Shown here in pieces: positions 11,459 to 42,247 of a DNA stretch of 64,000 nucleotides; the stretch's first letter is position 1, and every line of letters starts with the position of its first letter. The position numbers were made by a program, and so were the translations under genes. Source of the DNA: Bispira polyomma (taxonomy: Eukaryota). The stretch spans positions 62,558,001 through 62,622,000 of the forward strand of contig OZ287755.1 in NCBI GenBank assembly GCA_965649765.1, given 5' to 3'. The notes under the pieces were generated by a model. It was not told the DNA's origin. It searched no databases and was given only the letters and a program-made list of their open reading frames with translations.

Positions 11459-11685
11459 TCACCCAGACGGTCCTTTTGACTGTAAGTGTGAGAGATCAAG
11501 GCAAGCCCTACAGCATGTGTTCCGCGGACCTCCTAGCTCTCTGCAGAATTGTGGGTAATCGCGGGTGATAATAGAGCAGGAGTTGACTTTCTCCACGTAA
11601 TCCGTGCTGCCATCTGGTTTGTAGTGAGTCACCAGGTAGTGGTTTGTGGCTGACAGGGTGTCACGACAGTTACACCGACGCATAT
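11459..11685 (-). CDS. Exon E23: gamma module, probable terminal exon ending QSKGPSG-stop
   Basis: tttctgttag|AT. Encodes CNCRDTLSA...SCSIITRDYPQFCRELGGPRNTCCRAC. TGA at 11459-11461; no further module exon seen downstream. Confidence 0.88.
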
Positions 11686-11930
11686 CTAACAGAAAACAAA
11701 CAAACAGTTAGTCAACAACAGTCGGGAATTGTACATTTGATTTATTTATTCATTCGTAAACTAGGTACAATATAACATGTTTATACAATGTAAAAAAAGA
11801 AGAGAAAAATGATACAAAAAAAAATTAATAAATTAACATACATATTCAACATTAACATCTGTACATAACACTAGGATTCTACTCAGTAAATAGTAATTTA
11901 AAAAACTTTCTTAAAATTTACCTGCCAAAA

Positions 11931-12134
11931 TTACCATAACATAACATAACATATTGCATTTGGTATATGCTTTGTCATGTGTTATTGTAAATGTGTACAT
12001 GTGTGTAGTTTAAAGTCTGAGATCACCTCTATTACCATAACATAACATAACATATTGCATTTGATATATGCTTTGTCATGTGTTATTGTAAATGTGTACA
12101 TGTGTGTAGTTTAAAGTCTGAGATCACCTCTATT
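11931..12134. repeat. 102-bp direct tandem duplication
   Basis: TTACCATAACATAACATAACATATTGC...GAGATCACCTCTATT occurs twice. Confidence 0.85.
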
Positions 12135-12149
12135 GAGATCTTAGCCGAA

Positions 12150-12380
12150 TTTACAGTTTACACCCAAGCCTGGGTTTTTCCACTTGTCAGACAATTGTTC
12201 AGTCTCAGCTCCCTCAGAAACATACTAGCCATGCTGCCACATGTGGCGCACAAAGACAAACACCCATTAGCGGCCAGAGAAAGCACTTTGTCCAAAGGTA
12301 TAATCTCCAGGCCTGCAGCGAACCAGGACTTTGAGATCACTCAGATCCAAAGTCCGACACTCTAACCGCTAGGCCACAAA
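12150..12380 (-). mobile_element. tRNA-derived SINE, third family (copies ~46175-46415 minus, ~14090-14235 plus)
   Basis: Head TGTGGCCTAGCGGTTAGAG; shared body GAGGGAGCTGAGACTGAACAATT...ACAAGTGGAA...CCCAGGCT. The copy at 46310 has CCCAGGTGTATAAATGGGTACC. Confidence 0.72.
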
Positions 12381-12445
12381 GACCACCTGACATTTATTCC
12401 TAGAATTTTACTTTTTATCCCTTGAATAAAATTTAAAAAACTGAC

Positions 12446-12583
12446 CAGCATGTTTACAGGAGTCACAACAGTGGTTCCTGACATGGAGACAACGACAAGG
12501 GTCCAAGTGTACGTAGTCTCGACAGTTATACTTGACACCGTCTAGCTGCCAGTACATCAGGGAGTCGTCTACACAGCTCAGGT
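12446..12583 (-). CDS. Exon E22: beta module, paralog of E9
   Basis: tttcccag|AC ... GCT G|gtcagt. Encodes LSCVDDSLMYW...NCRDYVHLDPCRCLHVRNHCCDSC. Confidence 0.9.
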
Positions 12584-13415
12584 CTGGGAAATGTACAGGG
12601 AAAAATACAGAAGTACAACTACTTGAATACAAACCTCAAGAGAGATATGCTCCCATCACAGAAGGAGGGAGTGGGGAGGATAGCTATAACCCAGCTCAGG
12701 TATACACAACGATTCATATTCCTAAATGTTTCTCTCAAACAATTTCAAAATTGTTTCAAAGCATCTGATTGGCTTCTATCACAGAAGGAGGGAGTGTGAG
12801 GAGGATAACTATAATGCTGCTCAGGTATTCACAAAGATATTCTTATTCTTAAATTTATGTCTCACACAATTTCATTGGTTGAAAATATTGCTTCAAAGAA
12901 TCTTATTGTCTGAGACTAAATTATTTTGAAGAATTGTCTTGTAAGAGTGTTTGTGATTATGATCCCTCGAATGTACAACAAAACATCTACAGTGGTGACC
13001 ACTTTAAATCAAACCTCAAGGGATATATACTCATTACAGAGAAAGGGGGAGGATAACTATAATATCCAACTCAGGTCTGGAATGTACAGCAAAACATCTA
13101 TAGATGAGCCACTTTAATTCAAACCTTAAGGGATATATGCGCTAATCACAGAGGAAGGGGAGGATAACTATAATATCAAACTCAGGTCTGGAATGTACAG
13201 GAAAAATATGTACATTTTGAACCTTAAGGTATATGTTCCCATTAAGGCGTGGTAAGAGGTGAACCAATTTTCTGGTCCTAAAATTTCTGAATTACTGGGT
13301 TTAAATCAGGTATAAGTGGAAGTTAATGACTTATAATTGGAAGTTCATAACTACAGCAAACTAAAAATTAAAACAATATCAGGATGTGCCTGATAAAAAA
13401 CACACACAAACATAC

Positions 13416-13574
13416 CTCCAACATTCTGACAAGATCTACAGCAGGCTTGGCCTTGACCTCCGTAATCTTTACACTGGTCTTTGTAGTCTCTGGCCAACAG
13501 TCTGCAGTCATCTACAGGCTTGCCATTTAAATAGAGGGGATACTGCGCTGAGAGCTTGTCCATACAATTAGGCT
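13416..13574 (-). CDS. Exon E21: alpha module, paralog of E8
   Basis: cctttgtag|AG ... GGA G|gtatgt. Encodes CMDKLSAQYP...DDCRLLARDYKDQCKDYGGQGQACCRSC. Confidence 0.9.
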
Positions 13575-14721
13575 CTACAAAGGAATGAGAGAGATGTAAG
13601 TGTTATATATATTCCAGATTAAGTGGGCGCCTGTTTCACACAAAGCCGAACAATCTGTCCCTATTTAGCCAGATGTGTTGCTTATGGTAGCCGTTCTGTC
13701 CGTTTTCGTGATTTCCTCGTCAAAAAAAAAAGCAAGGCATCTCGCTACATAGGGATCGATTATTCAGTCTACACAAAGCCCTACTTAATGTACTCAGAAG
13801 GATGCTAGAAATCCGAGTATCCTACTATATTTAGTATCATATACTGAAATTGTTACCATGGTAAATAGTATACCCACTATAAGCTATAATAATAATGACT
13901 GTATCATCTATGAAATGTAGTAGATGCTTATTCCTTAGTACTAGGTACTCTGTGAAACAGTCCAACAAACCATTTCTGTAGCTCTAATAGAAGTAGGACT
14001 TATAGTAGAATCAATTGTCCAGGAGTACTTTGTAAAACTGTGGTCTCGATACAAACTCTGCTCAATAAAATTAAAGTTAGTCTATATGCAACGTATGTGG
14101 CAGCACGGCTGGTATGCTTCCTAAGGGAGCTGAGACTGAACAATTGGTTGACAAGTGGAAGAACCTAGGCTAGGGTAATAATCTTAAAACGCATTAGATA
14201 CCAGTGATGTTCATAACTGGGCTATATCAAATGATAATTAATATTATTATAATACCAGTCCCTGGTCATAAATCCATTGTGTTTTTGAAGTATCATATCA
14301 TGGAAATGATGATTAATGACAACTATATATTTTCAATTTGTCCTCATACACAATGTGACAATGACCATAATGTACTAATACAGAGAATATGGCGACCTTG
14401 ATGATAAAGCCTTGTAAAATATATACATCTACACACACGAGCCAATTCTTTTTAAATGAACAATTAAATAATTTTGACTATTTTGGCTTATGACCTTGGA
14501 TAGTTATCATTTATTCCTAATGACAATTCTTCATTTTTACATTATTTCTTTCAACCTAAAAACCCCGACTGTGATCATTAATTCTAAATTTTTTTCTGGA
14601 AAAACTCAGAAGTAAATTACTGACATTATTTTTTTAGCTATAAGTTCCACTTATCTACCCAGTATATATAATATATTGAATATTTTGTGGTAATATGTGT
14701 ACAGACAAACCATATACATAC

Positions 14722-14934
14722 CAATATGTGCCCTCCTACACATTTTACAACATGACTGCCCGGCTTTGCCCAACTCATCACAGAAGTTTGGATAACGAGA
14801 GATCAGGTCAAAACAGGAAGTGAATTTTAGCTTTGTCTCCTCGGCATCCAGAGCATTGAGTCCGTTAGGGTAGACGTAGTATGGATAGACAGAAGAGAGG
14901 AGGTCTCGACAGCTACAGCGCTCTGGGGTTAATA
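14722..14934 (-). CDS. Exon E20: gamma module
   Basis: ctttcag|TA ... ATT G|gtatgt. Encodes CSCRDLLSSVYPYYV...SCFDLISRYPNFCDELGKAGQSCCKMC. Confidence 0.9.
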
Positions 14935-16030
14935 CTGAAAGTATAGAAATGGAAGGGTAATTGGTATTGATGTATCTACCTTCATACGGCACTTAGAGCA
15001 CCATTTAACCATTTCCTGGATGTAACAGTCAACTGAATGCATATATCTACCCTTATCTGGTATTCAGTGTGCTAATTAACCCTTACCTGACTGTAACAGT
15101 CAACTGAATGCATATATCTACCTTTATCTGGTATTCAGTGTGCTAATTAACCCTTACCTGACTGTAATAGTCAACTGCATCAGTTACTGTCATTCCCCTA
15201 ACTGGAGAGAGAGGCTTGAGGATGACCATTTATCAACGTACCCAAGGATCTTTAGGTTGGCCACTGAGGATAGAATCCAGTGAAAGAGGACCATTGCCAT
15301 TTTAAGTGGTCATCCGAACCACTAGGCAAACGCGTGTTCACATCTTGCCCAAAGAGGGATGTTATCCCACCAAATGTAACTAGTGGCCGATACTGGGAGT
15401 CAAACCCGGGTTGATATATAATAACCAACCAACCAACAGATCTAGGCACAAACATTAGTGAAGCTAATTAAAGCTGTGAAGTCTAATATGACAAGCTTGT
15501 GTCGCCAATTCTGATTGGTTCACAAATATGATAAAATTTAGGACTACAACACAGGCAAGAGAAAGACCGCTTCCTCCATAATGGTTCTTACGTCTAGTTT
15601 AGTATAGCTCCGCATGACAAACCAGGGAACACAGACTTAGGGACACAGACATAGGGACACAGACGCGAAGCCTTAATCTTTCTACAACTCCAAGAGTGGT
15701 AAAATAATTCCTTGATCTGGAATAAGCGATAGGAAGACCATGTAAGGTGGGATAAGCTTTTTGATACAGATAGGTCTTGAAATTGCTTCTGAAGGTTGAA
15801 AGAGAAAGTAAGAATCTAATATCTTGTATTAGTGTATTTTCATAACGTAGCTGCAGCGTATGAGAAACTATGATTGAAATAGACTTTTGATTTGTTGGTG
15901 CGGTGGTCACAGGTGGGAATATTAAGGAACAAAATTGTGGGATTGACTTGCTAAGAGAGTAAGGGGTGAGAGATGGGTTATTTTGGGAGGCCTGTATTGA
16001 GAGTTATGAAGATGTGATTTACTGACTTAC

Positions 16031-16168
16031 CGACTCCTGCACAGGAAGCACAGCACTCTTTCTTCACCTCTTGACAGTGACACGGATCTCTGGCCACAAA
16101 GTCCTGACAGGTGATTCCTGGTCCTTTAGACTGCATGGTTCCTAGTTCTCTGTCTACACAGGCGCCGG
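16031..16168 (-). CDS. Exon E19: beta module, paralog of E6 (absent from the ORF track)
   Basis: gtattacag|CC ... GTC G|gtaagt. Encodes GACVDRELGTMQSKGPGITCQDFVARDPCHCQEVKKECCASCAGV. Confidence 0.9.
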
Positions 16169-16735
16169 CTGTAATACATTAAACCAGGTACAGTAGTGAA
16201 CACAAAGTATTGACAGGTGATTCCTGGTCCTTTAGACTGCATGGTTCCTAGTTCTCTGTCTACACAGGCGCCGGCTGTAATACATTAAACCAGGTACAGT
16301 AGTGAACACAAAGTATTGGCAGGTGATTCCTGGTCCTTTTGACTGCATGGTTCCTAGTTCTCTGTCTACACAGGCGCCGGCTGTAATACATTAAACCAGG
16401 TACAAAGTCTTGAAAGGTGATTCCTGGTCCTTAGACTGCATGGTTCCTAGTTCTCTATCTACACAGGCGCCGGCTGTAATACATTAAACCAGGTACAGTA
16501 GTGAACGCAAAGTATTGGCAGGTGATTCCTGGTCCTTTTGAGTGCATGGTTCTCAGTTCTCTGTCTACACAGACGCCGGCTGTAATACATTAAACCAGGT
16601 ACAAAGTCCTGAAAGGTGATTCCTGGTCCTTAGACTGCATGGTTCCTAGTTCTCTATCTACACAGGTGCCGACCGTAATACATTAAACTAAGTAGGGTAG
16701 TAACCACAAAATCCTGACAGGTGATCCCTAGTCCT
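16105..16735. repeat. 106/93-bp tandem array (6 units) of the E19 acceptor and the 5' half of the exon
   Basis: The unit AGGTGATTCCTGGTCCTTTAGACTGCATGG...GGCGCCGGCTGTAATACATTAAACCAGGTAC repeats. Acceptor-equivalent positions are 16170, 16276, 16382, 16475, 16581 and 16674. Confidence 0.92.
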
Positions 16736-16737
16736 TT

Positions 16738-16930
16738 TTGGTTTCAGGAAAAAGCTCAAAACTTATCTTTCTAATCTTACCTACCCACCTTAGTTTCCCT
16801 CCTGTACACCCCTACATCTTTCCTTACGACCTTGCTATGCCCATGGACTTTATGATTGGATCACTGATTCTGCTGTTGCACTTTAGAAGATGCCTAGTAT
16901 CATTAAAACGTTTTAAAAATGTATAATAAT
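16738..16930 (+). mobile_element. L2 3' tail, antisense to the host gene, abutting the E18 donor
   Basis: Same tail sequence as 24812-25030 but on the + strand. Confidence 0.8.
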
Positions 16931-16936
16931 ACAAAC

Positions 16937-17149
16937 CTCCTGATCCTCTGTTATCTTCCTCTTCCACCACCACCACTGTCTCGCGGTCTCCTTTACTACC
17001 TCCATAGTCGTAGTCGTAATACTCTACCAAGCTAGGGCCTCCTGGGCCTTTAGTGTCCACCACTTCTCCATACACCACCTCCTCCTCCCCACCGCCAGGG
17101 TTGATCACACCAATCACCTCGTCCTCTGTCCCACTCACCTCTTCAGGAC
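16937..17149 (-). CDS. Exon E18: Glu/Val/Gly-rich acidic linker with YYDYDY
   Basis: cctaaag|GT CCT ... GGA G|gtttgt. 213 nt, phase 1-1. Confidence 0.82.
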
Positions 17150-17478
17150 CTTTAGGTAATACACAGTACAAGGTGAAGGTCATAACATTTGTAAACCTGT
17201 ATCTGATAGGCTAAAAACCACCTCTTCAGGACATTTAGGTAATGCACAGTACAAGGTGAAGGTCCTAACATTTGTAAACCAGTATCTGATAGGCTAAAAA
17301 CCACCTCTTCAAGACATTTAGGTAATATACACAGTAAAAGTCAAGGTCATAACATTTTGTAACCCAGTATCTGATTGTTTAAAAACCACTATTGCAGGAC
17401 ATTTAGTAATATACACAGTAGAAGTCAAGTTCATAAAATTTGTAAACATGTATCCGATTGGTAAAAAACCACTACTTG
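17136..17478. repeat. ~83-bp tandem array (4 units) spanning the E18 acceptor
   Basis: CACCTCTTCAGGAC(C/A)TTTAGGTAATACACAGTACAAGGTGAAGGTC...CTGATAGGCTAAAA recurs four times. Confidence 0.88.
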
Positions 17479-17654
17479 TTTTTTAATGGAAAAACTTATA
17501 TTCTCTGGGCTGGTATTCACAAAGATTCATTAAGTTAGTCTTATATTTTTGTCTTAAGCAATTTGACTAGCTGACAATATTTTTTCGAAGAATCTGATTG
17601 GCTAAGACTTAGAACATTGTAAGAATTGTCTTACAGTATACTCTCTGTAAGTTG

Positions 17655-17808
17655 AATGACCAATATCCACAGTATTTGGTTTTACTTAACTTACAAGATC
17701 AATATCCACAGGATTTGGTTTTACTTAACTTACAAGACCAATATCCACAGGATTTGGTTTTACTTAACTTACAAGACCAATATCCACATGATTTGGTTCT
17801 ACTTATGG
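17655..17808. repeat. 39-bp minisatellite, ~4 copies
   Basis: GACCAATATCCACAGGATTTGGTTTTACTTAACTTACAA repeats; this explains ORFs 17652 and 17656. Confidence 0.9.
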
Positions 17809-18457
17809 TTGAAATATTTACAACTAGTATTTTTGACTGTTGGGACCAGGGTTCAGATATTCGGAAAGATTCTTATTCATCAAATTTTTGTCTCGATCAA
17901 TTTGATTGGCTGGGAATATTGTATCAAAGAATCTTATTGGCTGAGACTGAGAAATTTCTAAGAATTTTATTATAAGAAAGTTTGGTTTCATTATACAGAA
18001 GTTTCTGCTTCTTGCCAATAACCTAGGGGTCGAAAAGGGTGACATTTATGTCTAAAATATTGAAAGTAGTTCTCCTGACTATCACAGCATAAGGGTTTAG
18101 AGTTGTATGTATTCATACGCCAAATCCTATATGGCAGCAGCCTGTCAATTGTATTCCAGAAAAATTTAAAAATTACTTTATTAAATTAAATGTTGGATAA
18201 TAGAGGTTCCACAGTATTTGTAAGCCTTTTGTGTCTGACCATGTCTAATCCTTTCGACCCCAAGAGAAAACTATCACCGGGTACTGAAAGAAAATTTGTC
18301 GGCAATACATTACAGTTAACTGATGAACAAAAGATCCATTATATTTTCAACATTATGATGGTCTGATGGTGAATATTGCCTTGGCATGTTGGTTTGAATA
18401 CTATTATACTATGCATTAAGAGCATTATTTTTTACAAACTGAGAATTTCATACATAC

Positions 18458-18606
18458 CTAGGTTGACATATTCTTCCTCCCACTCCACCACTTTTGGCTG
18501 GTCAGGATTCACTTCATACCCCATCTCCACTGGTCCATGCTCGTTTACAAAGGTCACTTTTCTGTGGATCATGTCATCCGCACCATGATTCTTTGTGTAC
18601 TCAAAG
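18458..18606 (-). CDS. Exon E17: acidic linker
   Basis: tcttgcag|C TTT ... CTA G|gtatgt. Encodes FEYTKNHGADD...VVEWEEEYVNL. Confidence 0.8.
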
Positions 18607-18715
18607 CTGCAAGATAGTTTTTTGTCAAATAGAAATGAAGCTGCATATGCTTGAGAATGCTGCACAAAGTCTTCTGAACAAAGTACAAGACCACAAGACA
18701 CACACATTAATAGTT

Positions 18716-19205
18716 ATATTATTATTATTATGAATTTTTAACGTGCTTTATTGATGCTAAGCATCTTCTAAAGAGCAACAGCAGAATCAAAAATCCAATT
18801 GTAAAGTCCATGAGCATAGCAAAGTCATGAAGAAAGAGATGGGAGCATGTACAGGGGGAAGTTAAGGTGGGCAGGCATGGTTAAAAAGATAGGTTTTAAG
18901 ATTTTCCTAAAACCAATGAGTGTATCAACTGATCTGAGGTCAACTGGGAGTTTGTTCCATAACAAAGGAGCTACAATGGAGAATGCTCTGGATCCCGCCT
19001 TCCTGATGGGTCTGACCGAAGAAATAGAGAGTCTGTTGCCTCTCTTATGGTTACTGAAGGAGACAAGGGAAGCAAGGTAGAAGGGCTGTTGAGTGACTAG
19101 AGCCTTAAAAGTGGTAACGTGAATCTTGAACAAACTACGAGAGTGAATGGGCAGCCAGAGTAATTTTTTGAGATAAGGAGTGTCGTCTGTGCGACAACCC
19201 AGGTG
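18716..19205 (-). mobile_element. L2 LINE 3' fragment
   Basis: TPYLKKLLWLPI...AFSIVAPLLWNKLPVDLR...GFRKILK, followed by the shared 3' tail and (TAA)n. Confidence 0.85.
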
Positions 19206-19329
19206 AAACAAAACCTGCACAGTTAGTTTTGGATGGACTGGAGCTTTTTGATGGATATGGAGTGTAATATTATAAAAAAAGTTACTTCGGCTGTGATTCA
19301 ATCTGTGGATCTTGATTGTTAATGTTAAT

Positions 19330-20310
19330 GTTAATTTTTATGTTTTTACTTCTATAGCGCCACAATCGATGACCAGACATCCTCTGTGGCCCATAGCCTA
19401 GTAAGTGTGCAAGAGCATAGTCCGGTAGATGGAAAAAAGTTCGTAATCAAAGATTCAGTCATGACCATCAGATGCATGCTAGGGTGGGAAAGCGAGCTGA
19501 TACAGGTGTGTTTTGAGCCTTTTTCTGAAACCAATGATGCTTGTCTCAGTCCGAAGACTGGTAGGGAGGCTATTCCATTCAGCAGGTGCTGTAACTAAGA
19601 ATGATTTTGAACCAGCTTGTTGTTTTGGTAAGAAACCAGAGGTAGAGAGACGATTACCTCTGTTGGGATTGCTAAGAGACAGCATAGAAGATAAATAGGC
19701 AGGTTGATGTACATGAACTGTCTTAAAAATGAGGACAATTACCTTAAATTTAATACAAAACTCAATAGGTAACCAATGTAATTGTTTCAGCAGGGGAGTA
19801 GTGTGAGTGCGAGGGCCAGTATTGCTTACTATTCTGCACAGGGTATTTTGTATTTTCTTGAGTTACAGTGATCTAGTCGACTAGATACCATGGTATTTGC
19901 CACTGCAATGGCATATTCTTGGGTTAAATGTCGTCGAATTCTGCGAAAGTCACGGATGTTGCCGTAGCAGGAACGACAAATATTCGAAACACGTTTTTTG
20001 AAGGAGAAGTCAGAGTCAAAAGTAACTCCTAGGTTCTTCGCACTGTCAGCAGGAACAGTGCTGTTACCAAGAATGGTAGCAGAGAAGAAGTCAAGAACCT
20101 TTTCCCTCTGATGTCTTGAGCCAATGAATAGGAATTCTGTTTTGTCAGGGTTGAGTTTCAATTTTGAATTACTCATCCAAGATTCAATCGAAGACAGGCA
20201 GCTAGCAAGCTGTTCCAGGATCTGAGAACAATTTTTGGGAGTGAGGGAGCAGTAGATCTGTGTGTCATCTACATAGAAGTGATAGCTCATATTGTGGTGT
20301 GAGGATATTA
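19330..20310 (-). mobile_element. 5'-truncated L2/CR1-group LINE fragment (RT C-terminus plus 3' tail)
   Basis: HFYVDDTQIY, SWMSNSKLKLNPDKTEFL, LGVTFDSDFSF, SRLDHCNS, then APAEWNSLPTSLR...FRKRLKTHLY. These are typical L2 ORF2 motifs; the frame is broken. Confidence 0.9.
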
Positions 20311-21378: not shown

Positions 21379-21561
21379 CTATGTGAGTTTTCTGCTGTGT
21401 GACTGTATTGACATTCTGTACACGCTTCTGGTTTCTACAGCTAGCACAGCAAGCACCTGCCACGTCCACACACATCTCTGGGTATTTCTTCACTAGCTTA
21501 GGACAGGTGTCCACTCCTAAAGCCTGGGCCACTGCTGTGGGCAGCCGGTCAACACAGGAAT
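21379..21561 (-). CDS. Exon E15: alpha module
   Basis: tatttcag|AT ... ATA G|gtcagt. Encodes SCVDRLPTAVAQALGVDTCPKLVKKYPEMCVDVAGACCASC. Confidence 0.88.
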
Positions 21562-25030: not shown

Positions 25031-25046
25031 GCTAAGTCCGCTCACA

Positions 25047-25333
25047 TTACACCAAGCTGTTAATTACTGTGTTATTTCCATAACTACTGATGTACTGTTG
25101 TCTCTTTTTAATGAATTCCTGGCATGACTGACAACAAACTCCACCCAATGAGCCCACCCCTCCAGTACAAAGTCTAGGGAACCTGCTCAGTAAGTGTGAA
25201 CAGGAAGCCATCAACTGGGCATACTGGGTATTCAGAGGAGACTCAGTGGTCATGTGACTAGTCACATGACTTAATGACGACATCATTGGTTCTTCTGGAG
25301 ATAAACTGTCTTGGCAGTCACACTTGGTCAAAT
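25047..25333 (-). CDS. Exon E13: gamma module, runs into a TAA stop
   Basis: ttttcttag|AT. Encodes LTKCDCQDSLS...ASCSHLLSRFPRLC...VCCQSC...NSLV*. 3' boundary uncertain. Confidence 0.82.
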
Positions 25334-26258: not shown

Positions 26259-26402
26259 CTGCAGATTTACAACTCTGACAACACTCTCTGTGGCATCTCT
26301 TACAGTTACAGGGATCTGCCTTCACCCAGTCTTTACAGGTGTACCCCACTCCAGACTTAAACCAACGCTTATGAGAGTCGTCTTCACAGGAATCACTCTC
26401 AT
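26259..26402 (-). CDS. Exon E12: beta module with 8 Cys (absent from the ORF track)
   Basis: ttctaaag|AT ... GCA G|gtatgg. Encodes ESDSCEDDSHKRWFKSGVGYTCKDWVKADPCNCKRCHRECCQSCKSA. Confidence 0.88.
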
Positions 26403-27338: not shown

Positions 27339-27515
27339 TAAACCCATGTCTACATGTGAGGCAGCAGGTGCCATTGTCCTGCCCAATAAATGGCCTCCCA
27401 CATAATGTGAGATTAGTCTCCACCAGCTGTTGACAAGAGTAGGCAGACACACCTGTACCCAGGGTGATGCTGTGGGTGGATGACAGTGTATCCTTGCAAG
27501 TAACATTGGCTTTAT
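27339..27515 (-). CDS. Exon E11: alpha module
   Basis: aaacag|AT ... TTT A|gtaagt. Encodes CKDTLSSTH...SCQQLVETNLTLC...TCCLTC. Confidence 0.85.
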
Positions 27516-31116: not shown

Positions 31117-34100
31117 TATAGACGAAAAGCAAAGCATTTAAGCTACAAAAACTGCCTAAAAATTTTAACACCCAGCAGTGTTTTGAATGGTCTAAGACAG
31201 GTGTTAGGGTAGGGAACACACATATATATTATCAGCCAAAGCCAATAAATCTTTAAATAAAACAACAAAGGATTCATTCAGTAGTTTAATGGAATAACTA
31301 GTCCTCATAATAATATACGATCATATAAATATATCCTGAACATGACCCTGAAAAGCTAATCTCTAAATACAGATATATGAAAGTACCAAAGTGTATGGCT
31401 TTTACAAAACAAAATATAAATTCTTTTAATCCTGAATTAGTCAAAACTTAAAATGTATAGGATGCTTTTAGATGCAACAACAGTATTATTGTACTTTCCC
31501 GACAACCGTTTTTTTAGTTCTTGTTTTTTGGAATGGAAAAGGTTTTCCTTATTTTATTTCTGTTAATAACATTTTTTTTATATATCTTTTACAAATTGAA
31601 TTGAGTTTAATAATAAGAAGTTATTAAGATATCAAAAACAAAATGCAAAGTTTATCTGTAGCTATAATTACCTATAAATACATATTATACAGTCAGTAGT
31701 AATACCCTTGTAATGGGCACCATTATGGAATAATAATAAGGATGTACAGTTTCTTCGGATTGAACAATAAAAGATATTTTCAGGTGTTTACAAAAAATGA
31801 GTCACTCAGTTATACTCCATAATCCATATTAAACATTATAAGAAATTTTCATTTAATAATTAATCGTGAAGTTTTTTTTTGGTTTCTTGTCAAACCACGG
31901 CATAAACTGGCAGCATTACTTTTGCAGGAATAAACTATCTGCATTTAAAGTTTAACTGCAGAGAAAAGTTGCATTTTACATACATTTTTGGCACATTCAA
32001 GCAATGCATTGCAATTAGTTTAGTGTGTTAAATCGATAACCAACCAAATTATTATTCAGGAAATAATCATAAAACAAAGATTTTGAATCATTCTTAATCC
32101 AAATGCCAACTGTTAAAGTAGGATCTCCTTAATTGTAATCCATATTAAATATGTTATTTGTTAATCTGTTACAACATTAGCACCAATAGAGTATGCGATA
32201 AAACATTTTCTGTTAACGAATATAACAAATCTGTAAGGACACAAAAACACACATATGTACACAAATGACATCAAAAACACATGTACACTAGCCAAAGCCA
32301 TATCAAACTTCATAACTGAATAAAACGGAAGACTTTATGTTAATTTTTTTTAAATCCACAAGACTCTAACCTTTATTATGTGTCCTTTTTCAATCTAAAT
32401 TATTAATTTTATCAACCATTATTTATGTTTCAGCCATTTTTGTTTTACTATTTTATATAAATTCTTATGTACCAACAATAGAGGTTATGTTGAAAAGTAT
32501 TATGGAACTAGTTTTTATAATTTGTGTTGCAATTTGAAAAACATTATATTGGCAATAAATAGATCTGATGAAGGGATAGTGACATAAGCTACAGGTTTTT
32601 CAAAGTCTTCTGTTTTGTAAAAACACTGAAAGCACAATCTGATCACAAACCATCCTGGGGTAAAAAGGTGTTTAAAGATGCCACAACTGTTAAGTTACAT
32701 TTTGTTTGCAAAAGCTTGAAAGCCAATTATTACTTATAAGACAAGCTGTTTATGTGCTACAAATTAATGTACACAGCAGATAATATTGTATATATAGTCA
32801 CAAAAACTAACTGATTATTATCATATGTTAGGGAAACAGTTACTATTTTACTAAAGGTAAAACTACCAACACAGTCATCATGAATTATTCTAGCTACCAG
32901 TTTTGGAGAGGTTGAAAATTATTAAGTATTTAACCCATTGCTTACAAATGATGAACAAGCTTTGACAAGATGGATAATTTAATATAGGAAACTGGCCATA
33001 AACGTTTTAAGATATTCTAACTTAACGGTAATATTCAACCTTTCCAATTTAAATGGTTATAGTTGAAATAAGTAAAAGAAGTTAACTTCTAACTGTAAAC
33101 AACTACAAAAGTACAAAATCAACAAATTACATTTAACTGGTAACTATAATATAATAACATCAGTAATTACATTTTAAACAAATGTTTTACAAAATGGTAT
33201 GGAATACAAAAATAAAGAAGATTTCATGAAGTTGGATGTAAGTAAGAAAACTTTGGTTCTAATTGGAGTGATTAAGATCAGTAACACATTACAATAATGT
33301 CAAGTTCAACACAAGCTTTAGGAACTTGAGGGACTTCTTTCACAGAGTCCATGATATGTTGTAATGGTCGTTTTAATTGATGAACCCTTGCTTTACTTAT
33401 GCATCTGTTGCAAAAGTTGAGCAGTAGACTCCTTACCACGATTGCACCGAAATATTCAGGGCATAATTTTGAAAGCAAAATAAGAACGCAGCAAATTTAT
33501 ACTAAAAAGAAATATTTCTACCACAACTCATCTCAGGATTATTACACAACACAAAGGGCTATTGGTTTATGAAGATTAGGTGAGAATTATTTGCAGTTAT
33601 ATTACTAAAATTGCAATTAGATATACTCGCCTGTTTAAATAAATTAGTAACTTTTTAGAAAAAAACATTTCAGAAAACTTTTGTATGAAAGTAGTAATTT
33701 AGCCATACTAATGATAGTTACATGTTTTAGACTGTTAATAAATGCCCAAATGGTGTCTGTTTCATAGCTTGGTGTTTCAGATCCATCCATCCATCCCAGG
33801 TTTATCATTTAAAAGCTTGCAGTTATCTGGAACTGCATGTGGACTGTTAGAGGAATCAGATCACTATAAAAAATGTTTTAGGAGGAAACTATTGCTAGGG
33901 CTTGGGAAAGTTTGAGATTAGGAGCTGTCACTGGATTTTAAAAAAGGAAGATTCAGAAAAGGGGTAAGATATTAGTATCTAGCACAGTCTACCCAGAATG
34001 TTAGTAGTAATTAATACAAAATAAACAATGTAAAACAAGTTAACAACATATACATAACATAAAGAATAAACTAACACTGTAACAGTATCTAGATAACGGT

Positions 34101-34484
34101 CAATAAAAATCAACTAAGAAATAAACCAGCAAATGATCATTTTAGTGAAAGAAAAGACAGGTTTTACATAAATCGGGTCCCATATTCCCTAAACACACTC
34201 AAGCTCATGCAGAAACTCAACTTAATTGGTGGCCTATGTGGAAGTCCATGTTCATGGAGTAAACCTATACTTGTGACCATTCATTTTAGGCTAGCTTCCA
34301 TCTCTGAATCTAAATATGTAGTCAATTCAACTTTACTTCCACCCTAGCCGGAGATAGTAAGACTTCAGATTTGAGTCTGAGTTGAGCTTGAGATCTTTAA
34401 AGAATATGGCCCCCACTAATGTTAGTAGTAAATCCTCTTGACACTGAACAACATCAGCCTTCTCTCCCAAAGTGGTCTTTCTCT

Positions 34485-34711
34485 CTATCTCCCTTTATTG
34501 AAGAACTCAGACAACCTACCTACTTGGCTGCATGTTCTGCAACATGCCCTTCCTTCACCTCCAAGTCTGGCACATGCTTCAGGGAAGTCTCGAGCGATCT
34601 GATAGCAGGAGGTCACATTCTGCTTCGTTACGTCCCCTTTCACATTCACATTTCTCACAACGTAGGGGGTTTCACTAGAAAGGGTATCTCTGCACTGACA
34701 TTGGGTAAGAT
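34485..34711 (-). CDS. Exon E10: gamma module (either spliced out at 34520 or terminal, ending NKGR-stop at 34485)
   Basis: tttctcgtag|AT. Encodes CQCRDTLSS...SCYQIARDFPEACARLGGEGRACCRTC. Possible phase-1 donor GTA G|gtaggt. Confidence 0.85.
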
Positions 34712-37144
34712 CTACGAGAAATAGAAAGAAAACATGCACATTATTTTATTATAATACTTTTCAGCCTTTATTTTTCATTATATCAAATCCTAAGATGCTA
34801 GATCATATGATAATCAGACTGGAAGAAATGTAAGGTAGGAGCTGTCTTTATGTAAAAAAAAATTTTTTTTTTATCAAAATGGACATAAAAAACATAAAAT
34901 GTAATAAAAAACTGATATGCTAACATAAAATCCATATAAATATAAAAGTTTGAATAGTTTTTGTTGAAAAAATAGTTTGTTGTTCAAACGAAAAGTGGTG
35001 TGTAGTAGTTTGCATATAAAATAAACATTAGTTTATATTTTGCAACAGTTAATATTTAATCACTTGTGGGAAGAACATATAATTATCTTATTGTAAGGAC
35101 TAACTATGTTTCTTACTTCCAATGATTACAATTTCAATTTTGTCAGGATTAAATTTTAATTTGGATAAACAATCAAAGCCTAAACCCTGGCGAAACCACA
35201 TCCACCACTGAACCATAATCTTACTCTAGGTGGATATCCTTATCAGTGATGTCATATTAGTTGTGACATCACAAAAAAGCTGATGGATTTATTTTTATTT
35301 GATTGTCACAGGGGTTAGTGATAGACTAACTGTGGTTGAAATTGAAAATTGTCAACATTAGAGGTAGGTTTGTGTACAGTGAGGGTTAGAGTATCCAAAT
35401 TCCACTCTACCTCAGAGTTGGTTCATCTTAGCATCACAATGGTGTATACTAAGGGTTTATAGTGGGATAAAGGTTGAGTAAAAAACAAATTGAGTATCAG
35501 CATATATGTGACATGGACACTGTGATTGGATGTAACAAAACAAAGGGGGAATGTGTAAAGAGTACATATGAGAGGATAAAGACAAAACCTTTAGGTAATT
35601 CATATGACAGGCCTAGGTATCACAACACAAAGTCATAATCAATTAGGAACATAAATATAGGAGAAAATACAGGAAATTTTAATGAAGATATAGGAAAAAA
35701 AGTCATGTGTATGATATGAAGTCTTCCTGCTTTAAACCTTTAAATTTATTTCCATCTGTATGTTCTGGAAAGTTGTTCAATAATTCAATAAGTTTATTGA
35801 AATCTATTGCCATTAGTTAAGGACATATTTTCAAAAAAGTATGTACGGTCGAGGTTTTGACAAATATATAGTAACCATGTGTGCTCTGTAGGTTCATGTA
35901 AAGTGATCATATAATTAGTTTTTTTTCTATTATATACGAGCTAGATAGTATTTAAATCTAGTATATTTAACCTAGTGTAAGACGATGCCATTGATTCCAA
36001 ACTATCATTCAAGGGTATCAAATAATATACCATGGTTGATGGTATCAAATTCTGCTGAAAGGTCTAGAAGCATGAGGGCCTGCATGTCACTATGATCAAA
36101 GACCAGATTTATATAAACTAATAGAGAGAAGAGCACTCTTAGTGTATACAGATTAGTGAGTTACTTGGAATATATTGTTTGTTGAAGAGCTGATCTGTGA
36201 TCTCCTTGGCAACTGCTTTCTCAATTAATTTGTAGGCATAACAAAGGTTGGACACCAATTTAAAATTGTTAAATTTATTTTCTATCAAAACCACATTTTA
36301 GGTAGGAGGCAACATGAAATGGTTCTGAATCAGGAAGGAAATAAATCTTAAGGGAATAATTAACTTGATAGAGAAGGATTTTAAGATTTTAAAAACATCA
36401 TCATCATTAAAACGGCATTGCAATGGTTAGTGGCCATTCTATAGCGCTTCCTATCAAATGGTGACTTGGTGTATTGATTTGCTCTAATGGTTATTTACAA
36501 AGTTTGGCTTTATTGATGGCTGCTTTGGTTGAACCATGAGGCTCTGACATGGTGGCTAGAGTGTAGTAAAGTCAATTCAGTGCTAAAAGCTCTTATTATT
36601 ATAATGAATAGTCACAAAGTACTCGATATCTCCAGATAGAAGGATTTCCATATAGCCTTTATTTGAGTTGACTTTTAGTAAAGCTTAAAGTTTCTTTTGA
36701 TAATATGGGCGCAGATATGCTATAGAAGGAGACTGATAGAAGAAAAGGTTTGTGGTCAGAGTTCAGTCATAACCAGAAGACAGTTGTTAGGTTGGAAAAG
36801 CAAGTTTATACAGGTCTGTTTCGAGCTTACCAATCAGTAAGCAAGTACTTACCGACATCTATATATCCTTTTCAGAGAAGGAGTGCATTGGAGGATGATA
36901 TATCAACAGGGATTATACTGACAGGGCCCTTAAATCATATTGGCCTGACCTCGGGTACATATATCCTAGCATGGCCCTCATGAACATCTTGCCTTTTTTT
37001 ATTATACCAAAGCATTTTTTAGAGAGCCATAGCAAATATTTAGAGGGCCATATAGGGTTTTATGTTGTGTCATGTGATCGCATTTTAACCAATAGGATCG
37101 CTGGATTCGCCGTCGAGGTATAATAATGATCAGTATGTACTTAC

Positions 37145-37285
37145 CCACATTCCTACAGGACTGACAGCAGTGGCTGGCCACCTTCTGACAGTTACATGGG
37201 TCTGCGTGAACATACTCACGACACCCCATCATCCTCCCATTGTTCACTCTCCACCATCTCAATGCTTCATCTACACAGCTCAAGT
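37145..37285 (-). CDS. Exon E9: beta module
   Basis: cttgcag|AC ... GTG G|gtaagt. Encodes LSCVDEALRWW...GCREYVHADPCNCQKVASHCCQSC. Confidence 0.9.
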
Positions 37286-39802
37286 CTGCAAGAATAGAAT
37301 TTGTTGCATCATATATATTAAATTAACCTTTTCGACCCCTAGATTGTCGGCTAGCAGCCAATGGCATTTGTTACTCCGAGAACCTATGTCTGTCGGCAAG
37401 CAGCCAAGAACCCAAAAATGTTATTTTTTTTTCTACAGTTCCTTGCAATAGGATTTCATTAGTTACAGCTGACTTCCCCGTTAAAATACTATATGTCAGG
37501 TCTTGCAGTAGGAAGGAGTTGTGTGTGTTTTAGTGACTCCAACATTCCTCGCATTAGAAAATTGTCAGTACAACAGAATACAGTAGAGCTGGAATACCAG
37601 ATACTTATATTTAAAAAAGTGTGCTGAAAATTAATATGACTATACATGTATTTTAGATTACCTACATGATCGGTGAGTGAAGTAAAAGAGGCGCCTAACC
37701 ATTTCGATCCCTAGGTTGTCAACTAGTAGCCAATGACATTTGTCACTCCCAGAACCGATGTTTGTTGGCAAGTGGTCAACACTCAAAAACTATGTTGTTG
37801 TTTTTCCTTCAGTTCCTTCGGATAGAAAATTGTTAGTACTGCAGAGTTCCCCAATAAAAAAATATGTGAGGCTGTTACTGAATGCCGGAAGTAGTCTGTG
37901 GTGTGTGTTTTAGTGTCTTAAGCAATTTGTAACCTGTTACCAAAATATTTCAGCGAAAGTTTTTTCTTGAGGTTGAATGAGTTAATATATGGTCAGACAC
38001 CATCAAATATAGAGTAAAACCTCTATTATTCTAATTTGTATTATACAGGTATTCAAGCTTAGTTTCACTCTCTCATATTTATAGAGGTTTTCTTATTGTT
38101 TTATACAGAAACGTCTCATCTAGTTTATAACCGTGTACTCTCTAAACAAAATATCTTCTTATCACAGCATGTTTAGATGTTCAAAATATTTTAGTACAAT
38201 ATTTAGAAAATGTTATATATAACGAAAATATTTTATTTGCATTTCAATTCAAAAATCAATCGTCATGAATAGTTTCATTTTAACTATGTTAAAAAATTCA
38301 AATTGGTTGACAACGAAACTATTTTGTGAACTGAGTGTGAATTTTTTATATTTTTAGTGGTTAGAAGAGGTTAGAATTCCAGATAACAGTAGAACCTCCA
38401 TTTTCTAATGAACCTTGGAAAAGTTATTGAGATAATAGAACTGTTTGTACAATAGGGTGATATTGGTACAAAAACAACAGCAACACATAATTTTAGGCAG
38501 GAAAAATCAAGAGTTCATAAAAATCAAATATAATTGATGTTCGGATAATAGAAGTTTTACAGTACAAGAGCTGCTCTCTGTTCAGGAATTATAGGTCAAC
38601 CTATCACCAAAGCAAACTCAGCACCAACCAGCTCGGCACCAAACATGTACCATCAAGAAGATAAGAAAACAGTTTCTTTTTATTAAGCAAAGAAAATTGT
38701 TTAGACTGTGTCAACATAATAGTTTAGAACAATATTTATTTGAGCTAAAAATAACTCGCAAATATGATCACAACACACAAATATGATCTAATGATTATAT
38801 TTCTTCTTAAATGATGTAAGTAAAACGTGTATTCTCGATAATTAAATAAATTTGTTTTAATTTCCTGCACTTACATTTCTAGAGTTTGTTGAGCAATTTG
38901 TAAAAATTAAAATTTTATGTAACTAAATTAAATCTCAGTAGTGATGAAATTGTGATGTAGAATTGGTCTGGAGTTGGTTTGGCCGGTGCCGAGTTTTCTT
39001 TGGTGGCGTCTCAACCATGTGACCTTTCCCTCTTTATTTATATGATATGTGGTAGTCATGTAAATAAATTTAAATCTTAGCCAAAAAAATTCTTAAAAAC
39101 AACAAAATTGAAAAATATAAGAATCTTTGTGGTACCCGACTCAACCTTCACATTTCTCAGAATAAAATTTTTAGGATTTTTTTAAGTTTCAGCCATAATA
39201 AAACTTCAAAATAAATCTTTTGCAACAAAAATGACAGAGGTGGCACATAGCCTATATTTGAGTTGAATAGATTTTACTATATAATATTTTGATAAAAAAT
39301 AATACTTAATAATTGTATTATTCCCACATGTAGGCCCCCCATAGCCTAGTGGTTAGGGAGTGGTGATCAGTTCAAATTTTCAATTCAAAAGTTCTGATCA
39401 TGTGACTGGGTTCATTAGTGGAATTTCATGTACGTCTCCACAAGTACAATCTGGTGATGTACGATTGTACCATTTGCGCTAAATATTGGTGGTTTGTGTC
39501 TCCACAGTGTGATTTGGTAAAGGGTTTACAAGACTTTTAATAGATTTAATATGGTTTATAACACCACCACCGCGGCAATTTTTCGGTCCGATGCAAACAT
39601 TTTTGCTCCCGCAAAAGCTTTTATCGCAAACACAAATACTACAGTTGGTTTGTGTGTGGAGACAGTTGTATATACCGTATAAGGAGGAAACAAACTACAA
39701 ATCGTACTTCGTATGGCAAAATTGGTACTTGTGGAGAGGAGAACACCATGTCCATTGCTTCCTTTTTCGAATCGTTTGAGACAAAACTGAGTTGTGACTG
39801 AC

Positions 39803-39967
39803 CTACACCTTGACAGGAGTGACAGCAGTCTCCTCCCTGACCCCCGTAATCCCCACAGAACTGAGCGTAGTCTCTACGCAGGATACGGCAGTCATCTATG
39901 GTCCCGTTGTTACTCAGAATGATGGGGAAATCTGGTGAAAGCCTATCTGTGCAGGTCTGTGCTGGTC
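39803..39967 (-). CDS. Exon E8: alpha module
   Basis: aatatag|GA ... GTA G|gtcagt. Encodes CTDRLSPDFP...DDCRILRRDYAQFCGDYGGQGGDCCHSC. Confidence 0.9.
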
Positions 39968-41037
39968 CTATATTAAAACACATTGGTATAACACATAGTC
40001 ACAGATATGTATATAGACAATGTAATCTACGGCATTTTAGTCCCCTATAAGTCCACCAAGTTATGTATGAGCTAAAAGGTCAAGGCCTTATATAACCCAG
40101 ATAAACACTACAACTAGATGCCCAAAGGTATTGATTTTTCTCCAATTCACAGTTATATAAAACACTCTTGCAGGGTGAGGTATATACTGATGTAATATAC
40201 AATGAACAAATAAATGGATTCCCAGCTCAAAGAGATTTGATTTAACTATGAAGTTTTGTAAGTATTCCATTTCAGTCTACAATGTATATATATTCCTGAT
40301 TTCCATGTTTTGTACAACTTACAGTAAAACCTTTACATCAAATGAATACGCTTGGGACCGGGTCAAAATGTTTATTATACAGATATAAAGCTTAAACATT
40401 TACATATTTAAACACATTTATTAACCATAATGCTGTGTGCCTATTATGTCAAACTACAAGCAATACACTCTATACAATTTATCACACATTAAATTTAGTT
40501 AGGTTTTATGTTGCTGTCAACAGCTCAGGTGATATCATGACGGCCAGATTTATTGGTGGAAGAAACTAGTACTGTAAACCAATGACCTATGGCAAGAACC
40601 TGAAAAACTTTCCCATAATGAAGGAACTAACACGATTTCAACCCACATTGATTAGTGGCCAGTGATTACTAGCAAAAGCTTCTAACCACTAGGCCACTGC
40701 ATCCCTCATCACACACTCAAATACACGTTGTTTTTTTACAATACACGTTGTTTTTTTTACAATACACAGTCACTGATATAGAACGGAATCTAATATTCGC
40801 TATTGTATCTGAAATTTGCCAAAGCTCTAAAATTTAACCCAAATCAGTGAAAACTAGGCCAAAAAATAACTGGAAATTAAATAAATAAGACAAAATAGTA
40901 ACAAAACATATTAGTTTCACCATTTTTTACCCACAATTCTACCAACAACACAACATTTTTTAGGTAGCGAATTTAAAACCTGGCGCATTTCAGTTACAGT
41001 GGTGAATTTTCAATTCCTAAATACTCTATAGACTTAC

Positions 41038-41286
41038 TTGTTATATCTGCTGCCCGACAAGAACGGCAGCATGATTGTCCTGGACCACCGATCTGACTAC
41101 AAAAGCTGGAGAATCGGCCCTGAACGAGTTCTCTACACGAGTTGATGGTGATTGTATTCGTCCTTCGCTGGCTGGCGGCAGTACCTGCTTTGTCCTCTAA
41201 ATTGTCATTCCTCACCGAGGCAAACACATAGTAAGGGTGGCTCTTTGATAGGGTATCTCTACAGGTGCAGTCAGCTTGATTGAGAT
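41038..41286 (-). CDS. Exon E7: gamma module
   Basis: tttgacag|AT ... ACA A|gtaagt. Encodes CTCRDTLS...SCRELVQGRFSSFCSQIGGPGQSCCRSC. Confidence 0.9.
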
Positions 41287-42079
41287 CTGTCAAAGCAAGG
41301 AGCAATTTGAGGGTGTAAGAATATATTGAAAGGTCACTAGATATCCCAGTATATTTTATGTTCAGCCCGATAAAATGAAATGGAAAAACAATTATACATA
41401 TTAGTACATCATTTTGCGGATAATACAGGAGCTACTGTATATATTTTGTGTATGTACTATTAAATGTGACCTTTTAACATTGATAAGTTCAAGGTCACCA
41501 GTTCACAGACCATACCTAGATGAGAACAGTCTTGTGCAAACCTACTTTATACTGCAACTTTCACAGTGTCTCTAAGATAGTGTACACTGTATTACAGGTT
41601 TTAAATGCACTATACTGATGCTCACTACCTTTTATAAAGCGATAAAACAATGAATAGTACAAACAACATTGTTACATAACCAAAAATGATGTCTCAGGGT
41701 TAGTGAGTTGGTTAGTTAGTTAATTGGGTTAGCAAGTTTAAAAGGTTTTCACCTATAAAATTGATACTGAAAAGGCTTACCAAACATATCATGCTTTCAA
41801 AACTAAATGCAGACATCCCAAAGGTATTTTTAACCTGCCACATAAGATAGTTCCTAATGCCAGAGAACACTACCATTTTAAGTAATCTTCATAGCAAATA
41901 TGTATCTGGCTGTACCTGTTCACCCCAAGCTGGGACTGAACCCAGGTCATCTGTGTATGAATCAATCAAAGCTCATATACATATATAAGGTTTTTCAAGA
42001 TGGACATACGATCTTTGAGCGTGTATTTTCCCATTAAAAAAAATCATCCTTCCAAAAATGAAAAAAAATGCAGACATAC

Positions 42080-42247
42080 CGACTCTGGCACAAGATGCAC
42101 AGCATTCTTCTGCTACCTCTTGGCAATTACAGGGATCCCTTGCTATGAACTGCTGACATGTAATGCCCGAACCTTTGGACTGCATGCGACCCAACTCACG
42201 GTCCACACAGGCGTTCACTTGGTCTTGCTGACCGGCAGCAGCAGAGG
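42080..42247 (-). CDS. Exon E6: beta module
   Basis: atcacag|CC ... GTC G|gtatgt. Encodes CVDRELGRMQSKGSGITCQQFIARDPCNCQEVAEECCASC. Confidence 0.9.

What the first reader, a model, noticed from the sequence alone, without database searches (positions are those of the whole stretch)
11459..42247. Three-class module grammar: 7-Cys beta is always followed by 7-Cys gamma, predicting an inter-domain disulfide
Seen: alpha modules (E1, E3/4, E8, E11, E15, E21) have 6 Cys. Beta modules (E6, E9, E12, E19, E22) add a Cys in DPCxC. Gamma modules (E7, E10, E13, E20, E23) add a Cys in an N-terminal CxC[RQ]D. All five betas are directly followed by a gamma, and no gamma occurs without a preceding beta. Inference: the two odd cysteines pair with each other, so beta-gamma is an obligate 14-Cys, 7-disulfide bi-domain unit encoded by two exons, and alpha-beta-gamma is the repeating building block.
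Basis: partly seen in the sequence, partly recalled or inferred. Interest (0 to 1): 0.8.

Follow-up and report, generated by a model that had tools for sequence, protein, structure and literature searches.

The report
Cysteine modules stapled in pairs
A long animal gene encodes a secreted protein made of small cysteine-rich modules. Every module with a spare cysteine sits directly before another module with a spare cysteine, across many related genes, so the two spares very likely bond and lock the two modules together.

Summary
A minus-strand gene runs from about 61.4 kb to 11.46 kb. It is built from phase 1-1 exons, one Cys-rich module each. I count 6 alpha (6 Cys), 5 beta and 5 gamma modules, and every beta is directly followed by a gamma. 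One correction: beta E12 has 8 Cys, not 7.

The inter-module disulfide is supported by comparison, not by structure.
- At 35 readable junctions (this gene, 9 paralogous loci, a related species, one cDNA-like contig), all 30 odd-Cys upstream modules (29 beta) precede an odd-Cys module.
- All 5 beta-like modules that lost the spare Cys precede an even-Cys module.
- Gamma is not a separate class. It is an alpha-type module with an N-terminal Cys. That Cys was gained or lost at least 3 times (about 10 on the best tree), always matching its position after a 7-Cys beta.
- The tools return no coordinates, so SG-SG distance could not be measured. Two fold tests were inconclusive.

No module reaches any Pfam threshold. 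The modelled fold resembles ShKT weakly, and the Cys spacing is PLAC-like.

"Alpha-beta-gamma" is only this gene's duplication pattern; the conserved unit is beta-gamma.

First readers of this scan noted a similar grammar at a paralogous locus on the same chromosome (s1-611910).

Verdict: a new variant of a known kind, of moderate interest.

The parts
60802..60963 (-). E1, alpha module (6 Cys). A Gly-rich repeat region precedes it in the same exon.
   Evidence: alpha HMM 46 bits
46455..46545 (-). E3, first half of the split alpha module (C1 and C2). Phase-1 acceptor, phase-2 donor.
44351..44417 (-). E4, second half of the split alpha module (C3 to C6). The exon continues into an acidic linker.
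42081..42245 (-). E6, beta module (7 Cys; spare Cys two residues before C3)
   Evidence: beta HMM 47 bits
41039..41284 (-). E7, gamma module (7 Cys; spare Cys two residues before C1; long hairpin insert)
39804..39965 (-). E8, alpha module (6 Cys)
37146..37283 (-). E9, beta module (7 Cys)
34521..34709 (-). E10, gamma module (7 Cys). AlphaFold model pLDDT 88.7: a beta-hairpin followed by three short helices.
27340..27513 (-). E11, alpha module (6 Cys)
26260..26400 (-). E12, beta module with 8 Cys: the usual spare Cys plus one more, four residues before the CC pair
   Evidence: DNA contigs of two samples agree.
25089..25331 (-). E13, gamma module (7 Cys)
21425..21559 (-). E15, short 6-Cys module, intermediate between alpha and beta by HMM score. 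Non-module exons follow it.
   Evidence: alpha 28.5, beta 27.1, gamma 25.4 bits
16032..16166 (-). E19, beta module (7 Cys), 80% identical to E6
14723..14932 (-). E20, gamma module (7 Cys)
13417..13572 (-). E21, alpha module (6 Cys)
12447..12581 (-). E22, beta module (7 Cys)
11474..11683 (-). E23, gamma module (7 Cys). Probably the last coding exon: the frame stops 13 codons after C6.

Best explanation
The window holds a roughly 50-kb minus-strand gene for a secreted, modular, matrix-like protein. Its Cys-rich modules are each one phase 1-1 exon. They belong to a lineage-expanded family that Pfam does not capture.

The modelled fold is ShKT-like (a helical core held by three disulfides). The Cys spacing is PLAC-like: C1-x-D ... 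C2 ... C3 ... C4C5-x-x-C6. There are two structural subtypes. The long subtype (alpha and gamma) has a beta-hairpin inserted between C1 and C2. The short subtype is beta.

A 7-Cys beta carries a spare Cys two residues before C3. The next module carries a spare Cys 1 to 3 residues before its own C1. I infer that these two form one disulfide across the short linker (4 to 9 residues). That bond would staple the beta core to the start of the next module and make the pair one rigid unit, while the other junctions stay hinge-like.

Shown here: module anatomy, exon phases, the parity rule, purifying selection, repeated concerted gain and loss of the downstream Cys, and duplication of beta-gamma as a unit.

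Inferred: the bond itself, the rigidity, secretion of this particular protein (the signal-peptide exon was not found in the window), and the ShKT-type pairing of the six core Cys.
For: - Anatomy and phases.
- Parity rule outside the window: 17 seven-Cys betas in 7 paralogous loci of the same genome are all followed by an odd-Cys module. These are 12 gammas with C-x-C or C-x-x-C, 2 with CC, 1 with the Cys after C1, and 2 nine-Cys C-terminal modules. Four 6-Cys betas are all followed by even-Cys modules.
- Related species: 3 b7-g7 on L051; 2 b7-g7 and 1 b6-d8 on L054/L055.
- P0001, an intronless contig: 2 contiguous b7-g7 pairs.
- L015: an alpha-length module with a pre-C3 Cys is followed by another 7-Cys module.
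- C-terminal delta modules have 8 Cys after a gamma or a 6-Cys beta, but 9 Cys after a 7-Cys beta.
- Alpha and gamma are one class by HMMs built only from paralogs. They interleave on a tree built without the N-terminal segment. The extra-Cys state needs 10 changes on the best tree (9-12 in bootstraps), at least 3 forced by starred branches, and none disagrees with position.
- Orthologous exons E19-E23 in a related species: pN 0.10, pS 0.72, ratio 0.14, 34 of 34 Cys kept, introns unalignable.
- That species also carries one extra beta-gamma pair, duplicated as a unit.
Against: - No geometry: the structure tools return no coordinates.
- The two-chain fold test scored 0.03 and gave no verdict.
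- The AlphaFold model of a natural b-g-b stretch had pTM 0.45 and betas at pLDDT 54-69, so it says nothing about packing.
- After phylogenetic correction the association is not formally significant: 3 independent contrasts on well-supported branches (sign test p 0.25) and 1 for the betas.
- E12 has 8 Cys, so the E12-E13 pair is left with one unpaired Cys.
- On L012, an 8-Cys module precedes a 7-Cys module whose partner could not be read.
- No RNA data exist for this organism in the run index.
Confidence: 0.7

Rival explanations
1. The two spare cysteines do not bond to each other. Beta-gamma is simply inherited and duplicated as a two-exon block. Each spare Cys serves another purpose: disulfides between molecules that polymerise the matrix protein, a free redox-active thiol, or metal binding.
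For: Much of the order is explained by block duplication: E6-E10 against E19-E23, tandem paralog copies, and the b-g duplication in the related species. E12 carries a further unpaired Cys, so free or intermolecular Cys do occur in this protein. The phylogenetically corrected tests lack power.
Against: Inheritance alone does not explain three things. First, 6-Cys betas are always followed by even-Cys modules. Second, the C-terminal delta module has its extra Cys only when it directly follows a 7-Cys beta. Third, alpha-type modules within one well-supported clade differ in the N-terminal Cys exactly according to what precedes them. Two Cys used for independent intermolecular links would have no reason to be lost together.
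Confidence: 0.17
2. The spare cysteines reshuffle the bonds inside or across the modules. For example, the gamma N-terminal Cys replaces C1 in the bond to C6, and C1 bonds across to beta. The unit would then still be 7 disulfides, but with a different wiring from 'six canonical plus one staple'.
For: The parity evidence only says that the pair has an even total. It does not say which Cys pair with which. The position of the downstream Cys varies: 1 to 3 residues before C1, or 3 to 7 residues after it.
Against: The six core Cys are invariant in all classes, including 6-Cys modules that must close on themselves. The gamma model folds confidently on its own, with the N-terminal ten residues the least confident part (mean pLDDT 73). 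That is as expected if the N-terminal Cys is not part of the core.
Confidence: 0.08
3. The exons are not a functional gene (decayed repeats or chance open frames), so the grammar has no protein meaning.
For: No RNA run is available. No Pfam family matches. The first exon, with a signal peptide, was not located.
Against: Only the exons align with the related species. pN/pS is 0.14 with saturated synonymous sites, and all 34 Cys are kept. Splice sites and phases are consistent. A homologous intronless transcript-like contig encodes a signal peptide followed by a-b-g-b-g-b.
Confidence: 0.02

Closest known systems
ShKT / SXC six-cysteine domain (Pfam PF01549; solved examples 2k72, the MMP23 toxin-like domain, and 2mcr, a Brugia ShK-like peptide)
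   Same: Both are small secreted modules that start with C-x-D, have six core Cys and a helical core, and often occur in tandem arrays. Of 48,161 PDB representatives, the only two that aligned to the gamma model at Z of 2 or more are ShKT domains. They cover 33-34 of their 36-37 residues at rmsd 2.0-2.2 Å. Language-model features also place P0001 nearest ShK clusters.
   Different: C4 and C5 are adjacent here (CC-x-x-C), whereas in ShKT they are spaced by three residues (my own knowledge of ShKT). The long subtype has a 15 to 45 residue hairpin insert between C1 and C2. The Pfam ShK model hits 61 other exons in this genome but none of these modules. As far as my searches reach, paired spare Cys across neighbouring ShKT domains have not been described.
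PLAC domain (Pfam PF08686; C-terminal module of ADAMTS/ADAMTSL, papilin and PACE4)
   Same: Both have six Cys, start with C-x-D and end with CC-x-x-C (the PLAC spacing is from my own knowledge). Three of 50 modules give sub-threshold PLAC matches, best E 0.0047.
   Different: No module reaches the PLAC gathering score. The 10 canonical PLAC exons of this genome lie elsewhere. Loop lengths are much longer here. The modules form long tandem arrays rather than a single C-terminal copy.
CRISP cysteine-rich domain (hinge plus ShKT-like ICR; Pfam PF08562)
   Same: A ShKT-like core is tied to an N-terminal extension by additional disulfides (my own knowledge). One module gives a sub-threshold Crisp match, E 0.008.
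   Different: In CRISPs the extra bonds lie within one C-terminal region next to a CAP domain. Here the inferred extra bond joins two homologous tandem modules.
Secreted cysteine-rich repeat proteins with cysteines in the linker (ScrepYard; double-antistasin)
   Same: Both are tandem disulfide-rich domains in which Cys near the linker are bonded. ScrepYard calls such cases few and uncharacterised (PMC9885460).
   Different: This is a different fold. Here there is one Cys on each side of the junction, and the rule holds across a whole gene family.

Membership tests
ShKT (PF01549) | Match to the Pfam model at or above the gathering score (20.9 bits) | tested here: not met
   No ShK match at E up to 10 for 10 window modules or for the 50 members of A2. 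The six-frame genome search finds 61 ShK exons, none in these loci.
ShKT (PF01549) | Cys spacing ending C-x3-C-x2-C | tested here: not met
   All modules end CC-x2-C. The ShKT spacing is from my own knowledge.
ShKT (PF01549) | Fold superposable on solved ShKT domains | tested here: inconclusive
   Gamma model (pLDDT 88.7) against 2mcr and 2k72: Z 2.2 and 2.1, rmsd 2.0 and 2.2 Å, 33 and 34 residues aligned. These were the only two chains with Z of 2 or more among 48,161. Foldseek found nothing.
ShKT (PF01549) | Disulfide pattern C1-C6, C2-C4, C3-C5 | not testable with these tools
   No coordinates or bond lists are returned. This needs mass spectrometry or a solved structure.
PLAC (PF08686) | Match to the Pfam model at or above the gathering score (26.4 bits) | tested here: not met
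   Only 3 of 50 modules give sub-threshold matches, best E 0.0047. None at E up to 10 for 10 window modules. The genome's PLAC exons lie elsewhere.
PLAC (PF08686) | Six Cys with C-x-D start and CC-x2-C end | tested here: met
   Invariant columns of A1, A3 and A4. The PLAC consensus itself is recalled from memory, not retrieved here.
PLAC (PF08686) | Single copy at the C-terminus of a protease or ADAMTS-like protein | tested here: not met
   There are 16 modules in tandem in this gene and 3 to 7 in paralogs. No protease or TSR exons were seen.
   All 30 odd-Cys upstream modules are followed by an odd-Cys module.
   All 5 six-Cys betas are followed by even-Cys modules. Delta has 9 Cys after b7 and 8 otherwise. 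At least 3 well-supported, and about 10 best-tree, changes of the downstream Cys all match position. Formal significance after phylogenetic correction was not reached.
   Complex prediction gave no verdict. The AlphaFold b-g-b model had low confidence in the betas, and no coordinates are given.
   No RNA run holds this locus. The runs that were laid are DNA.

The most novel reading that the evidence does not exclude
These modules form a previously unclassified domain family, a distant cousin of ShKT and PLAC, with a family-wide donor/acceptor code. A Cys just before C3 donates a staple to the next module. A Cys at the start of a module accepts one from the module before. A module can carry neither, either, or possibly both (the 8-Cys module on L012). 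Evolution would then set each junction of a long matrix protein to rigid or flexible by concerted gain or loss of one Cys pair.
Probability: 0.45. Interest if true: 0.6.

Novelty: new variant of a known kind. Interest (0 to 1): 0.45.

Why it matters
If the staple is real, this family is a clean natural example of junction stiffness in a modular extracellular protein being set one Cys pair at a time. The partner residues can be read directly from exon sequence.

It also marks a sizeable Cys-rich domain family that current domain libraries miss. The same genome has at least 58 exon matches, and there are relatives in other species. The parity rule (odd modules come in adjacent pairs) can be used to check gene models and exon order in such arrays.

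It does not open a long-standing question. Disulfides between neighbouring modules are known in other extracellular proteins.

Tried and rejected
- Complex prediction on E9 beta plus E10 gamma as two chains: ipSAE 0.03, "no answer"; the alignments were not used. This is not evidence either way.
- AlphaFold on P0001:185-337 (natural b-g-b) with alignment A5: gamma 81-91 pLDDT, betas 54-69, pTM 0.45. MAFFT would not place single beta and gamma rows on their own halves (A2; local trials). The betas therefore had only two rows. Inconclusive.
Exons were searched one by one by reference. The only contiguous pairs used are those of P0001.
- Foldseek against PDB and the ESM Atlas shape search: nothing meaningful. 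Profile A1 against PDB sequences: chance-level hits only.
- The search for homologous proteins with P0001 and the search for related loci in metagenome contigs: only P0001 itself.
- The profile search of 1.84 billion representatives gave 31 hits. Most of those I read are single-exon fragments from related genomes; one is a false positive (P0016, an ankyrin protein). P0006, P0018 and P0024 carry 5 to 9 stretches matching the same Cys pattern.
Those junctions, and a profile-profile comparison with the genome's own PLAC and ShK exons, were not done.
- No RNA runs were found, so exon skipping could not be examined. Read laying showed only DNA contigs.
- The first beta tree run mislabelled E6 because of a script slip. 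It was corrected.
I redid it with coordinates only.
- The organism could not be identified with the tools at hand.
Full report
**What is in the window**

Translating both strands and searching for the CC-x-x-C motif shows the feature is a minus-strand gene. Each module sits in one open segment. Each is bounded by a pyrimidine-rich AG acceptor and a GT donor, both in phase 1. These are classic one-domain, phase 1-1 exons. Exact references for 15 complete modules were derived.

The sixteenth module, alpha E3/4, is split by an intron between C2 and C3. E3 is at 46455-46545 and E4 starts at 44417. A scan of all minus-strand open segments with class HMMs found no further complete module. It did find half-copies of the E19 exon in the upstream intron.

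**Check of the observation**

E12 has 8 Cys, with an extra one four residues before the CC pair. DNA contigs from two samples read that exon without any difference.

In alignments A1, A3 and A4:
- The beta spare Cys is the first Cys of the C-x-C just before C3.
- The gamma spare Cys lies two residues before C1.

Gene order is a, a, b-g, a, b-g, a, b-g, a, non-module exons, b-g, a, b-g. Random order would give this with probability 2.3e-4. The five pairs are not five independent trials, because E6-E10 and E19-E23 are a duplicated five-module block.

**Is it a real gene?**

- A 56-kb contig from a related species (L051) carries the counterpart of E19-E23.
- Only the exons align between the two.
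- Synonymous sites are near saturation (pS 0.72) while pN is 0.10, a ratio of 0.14.
- All 34 Cys, including the odd ones, are kept.
- No RNA run is available.

**What kind of module is it?**

No module reaches any Pfam threshold. The Pfam ShK and PLAC models find 61 and 10 other exons in this genome, but none of these modules.

Weak signals point to the same neighbourhood of families:
- Three of 50 modules match PLAC below threshold, and one matches Crisp.
- Language-model features put P0001 nearest ShK clusters.
- The AlphaFold model of gamma E10 is confident (pLDDT 88.7). It has a beta-hairpin followed by three short helices.
- That model aligns, among 48,161 PDB representatives, only to two ShKT domains. 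They are covered nearly end to end at rmsd about 2 Å, but with Z of only 2.1-2.2. Foldseek found nothing.

I therefore call the modules ShKT-like in fold and PLAC-like in Cys spacing, and members of neither Pfam family.

HMMs built only from paralogs separate beta sharply. They score alpha and gamma alike. So there are two structural subtypes, not three. Gamma is an alpha-type module with an added N-terminal Cys.

**The test that bears on the claim**

The same genome (1.04 Gb; the window is on contig 8) has at least 58 exon matches to the module profile, in about a dozen clusters. I read nine clusters, two contigs of a related species, the orthologous contig L051 and the intronless contig P0001.

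Results at every junction where both neighbours could be read:
- All 29 seven-or-more-Cys betas are followed by an odd-Cys module.
- An alpha-length module with a Cys before C3 (L015) is also followed by a 7-Cys module.
- All 5 beta-like modules that lack the spare Cys are followed by an even-Cys module.
Its spare Cys can be 1, 2 or 3 residues before C1, or a few residues after it. In one cluster the partner is a basic C-terminal module (here called delta).
- Delta has 9 Cys after a 7-Cys beta, and 8 Cys after a gamma or a 6-Cys beta.

A naive Fisher test on 30/0 against 0/5 gives 3e-6, but related copies inflate it.

On a tree of 48 alpha-type modules, built after removing everything before C1:
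- The extra-Cys state needs 10 changes (9-12 in bootstraps).
- At least 3 changes are forced by well-supported branches.
- Every change agrees with whether a 7-Cys beta precedes the module.

The corrected sign test has too few well-supported contrasts to reach significance: 3 contrasts, p 0.25. For the betas there is only 1.

The related species also has b-g-b-g-a-b-g where the window has b-g-a-b-g. So beta-gamma was duplicated as a unit.

**Structure-based tests**

Neither helped. The two-chain test gave no verdict. The AlphaFold model of a natural b-g-b stretch was confident only in the gamma.

**Mechanism**

In a ShKT-type fold, C1 bonds C6. The two ends of a module therefore lie together, and C3 bonds C5 close to the C-terminus (established knowledge of ShK; not tested here). 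A Cys two residues before C3 would then lie near the module's exit. The next module's spare Cys follows only 4 to 9 residues after C6.

A single bond between them is sterically plausible. It would fix the linker and the relative orientation of the two modules. This step is inference.

**Loose ends**

- E12's eighth Cys leaves the E12-E13 pair odd.
- An 8-Cys module on L012 has both an N-terminal Cys and a pre-C3 Cys. It may close on itself or take part in a chain of staples.
- The organism, the expressing tissue and the signal-peptide exon are unknown.

**Earlier notes of this scan**

First readers noted a similar A-B-A-B-C order with complementary extra cysteines, and "PLAC-like" modules, at a locus 3.67 Mb upstream on the same contig (s1-611910, s1-611864). 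I read the neighbouring stretch (a-b-g at contig 8, 58.882-58.885 Mb), not their exact range.

**Verdict**

The inter-module disulfide is well supported by comparative evidence but unproven. The "three classes" and the "alpha-beta-gamma unit" need revision. This is a new variant of a known kind, of moderate interest.

Noticed in passing
window 26260-26400 (-): Beta E12 has an eighth Cys, four residues before the CC pair, at a position that is hydrophobic or Tyr in other betas. This leaves the E12-E13 pair with 15 Cys. DNA contigs of two samples agree with the window.
   Followed up: partly
window 16201-16571 (-): Three to four tandem half-copies of the 5' part of exon E19 (beta HMM positions 2-23) lie in the intron upstream of E19. 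They align to the E19-like exons of the related species at about 81-83%.
   Followed up: partly
L031-L046, L048, L050 (paralog loci on contigs 8, 11 and 4): A fourth module class ('delta') closes many paralogous genes. It is a basic module with C1, then a C-x-x-C-x-C cluster, then C ... CC-x-x-C. It has 8 Cys normally and 9 Cys after a 7-Cys beta. The window gene has none.
   Followed up: partly
L012:1500-2900 (+) and L015:450-1700 (+): Variant modules carry the spare Cys in other places: 4-5 residues before C3, 6 residues before C1, or 6-7 residues after C1. L015 shows a 7-Cys then 7-Cys junction. L012 shows an 8-Cys then a 7-Cys module whose partner lies outside the fetched DNA.
   Followed up: partly
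L051:9000-18500 (+): The related species has one more beta-gamma pair than the window at the E19-E23 end of the gene (b-g-b-g-a-b-g). Its two E19-like betas are nearly identical.
   Followed up: yes
window 60964-61340 (-) and 43214-43816 (-), 16824-17183 (-): Non-module parts of the same gene: a Gly-rich decapeptide-like repeat before E1, a linker exon with a recurring K-G-P motif, and an acidic exon rich in Tyr, Asp, Glu and Gly.
   Followed up: no
window 19829-20290 (-), 52051-52719 (+), 62982-63395 (-): Reverse-transcriptase-like open frames, probably retroelement fragments, inside the introns and flanks of the gene.
   Followed up: no
window 47976-48470 (+), 59225-59690 (-), 17652-17975 (+): Minisatellite-like tandem repeats that read as repetitive open frames. 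They lie in introns and are not related to the modules.
   Followed up: no
G000 contigs 1, 2, 10 (ShK) and 2, 3, 4, 9 (PLAC): The genome has large clusters of canonical ShK exons (for example contig 2 at 98.67-98.90 Mb and 22.27-22.33 Mb) and a few canonical PLAC exons. All are separate from the module family studied here.
   Followed up: no
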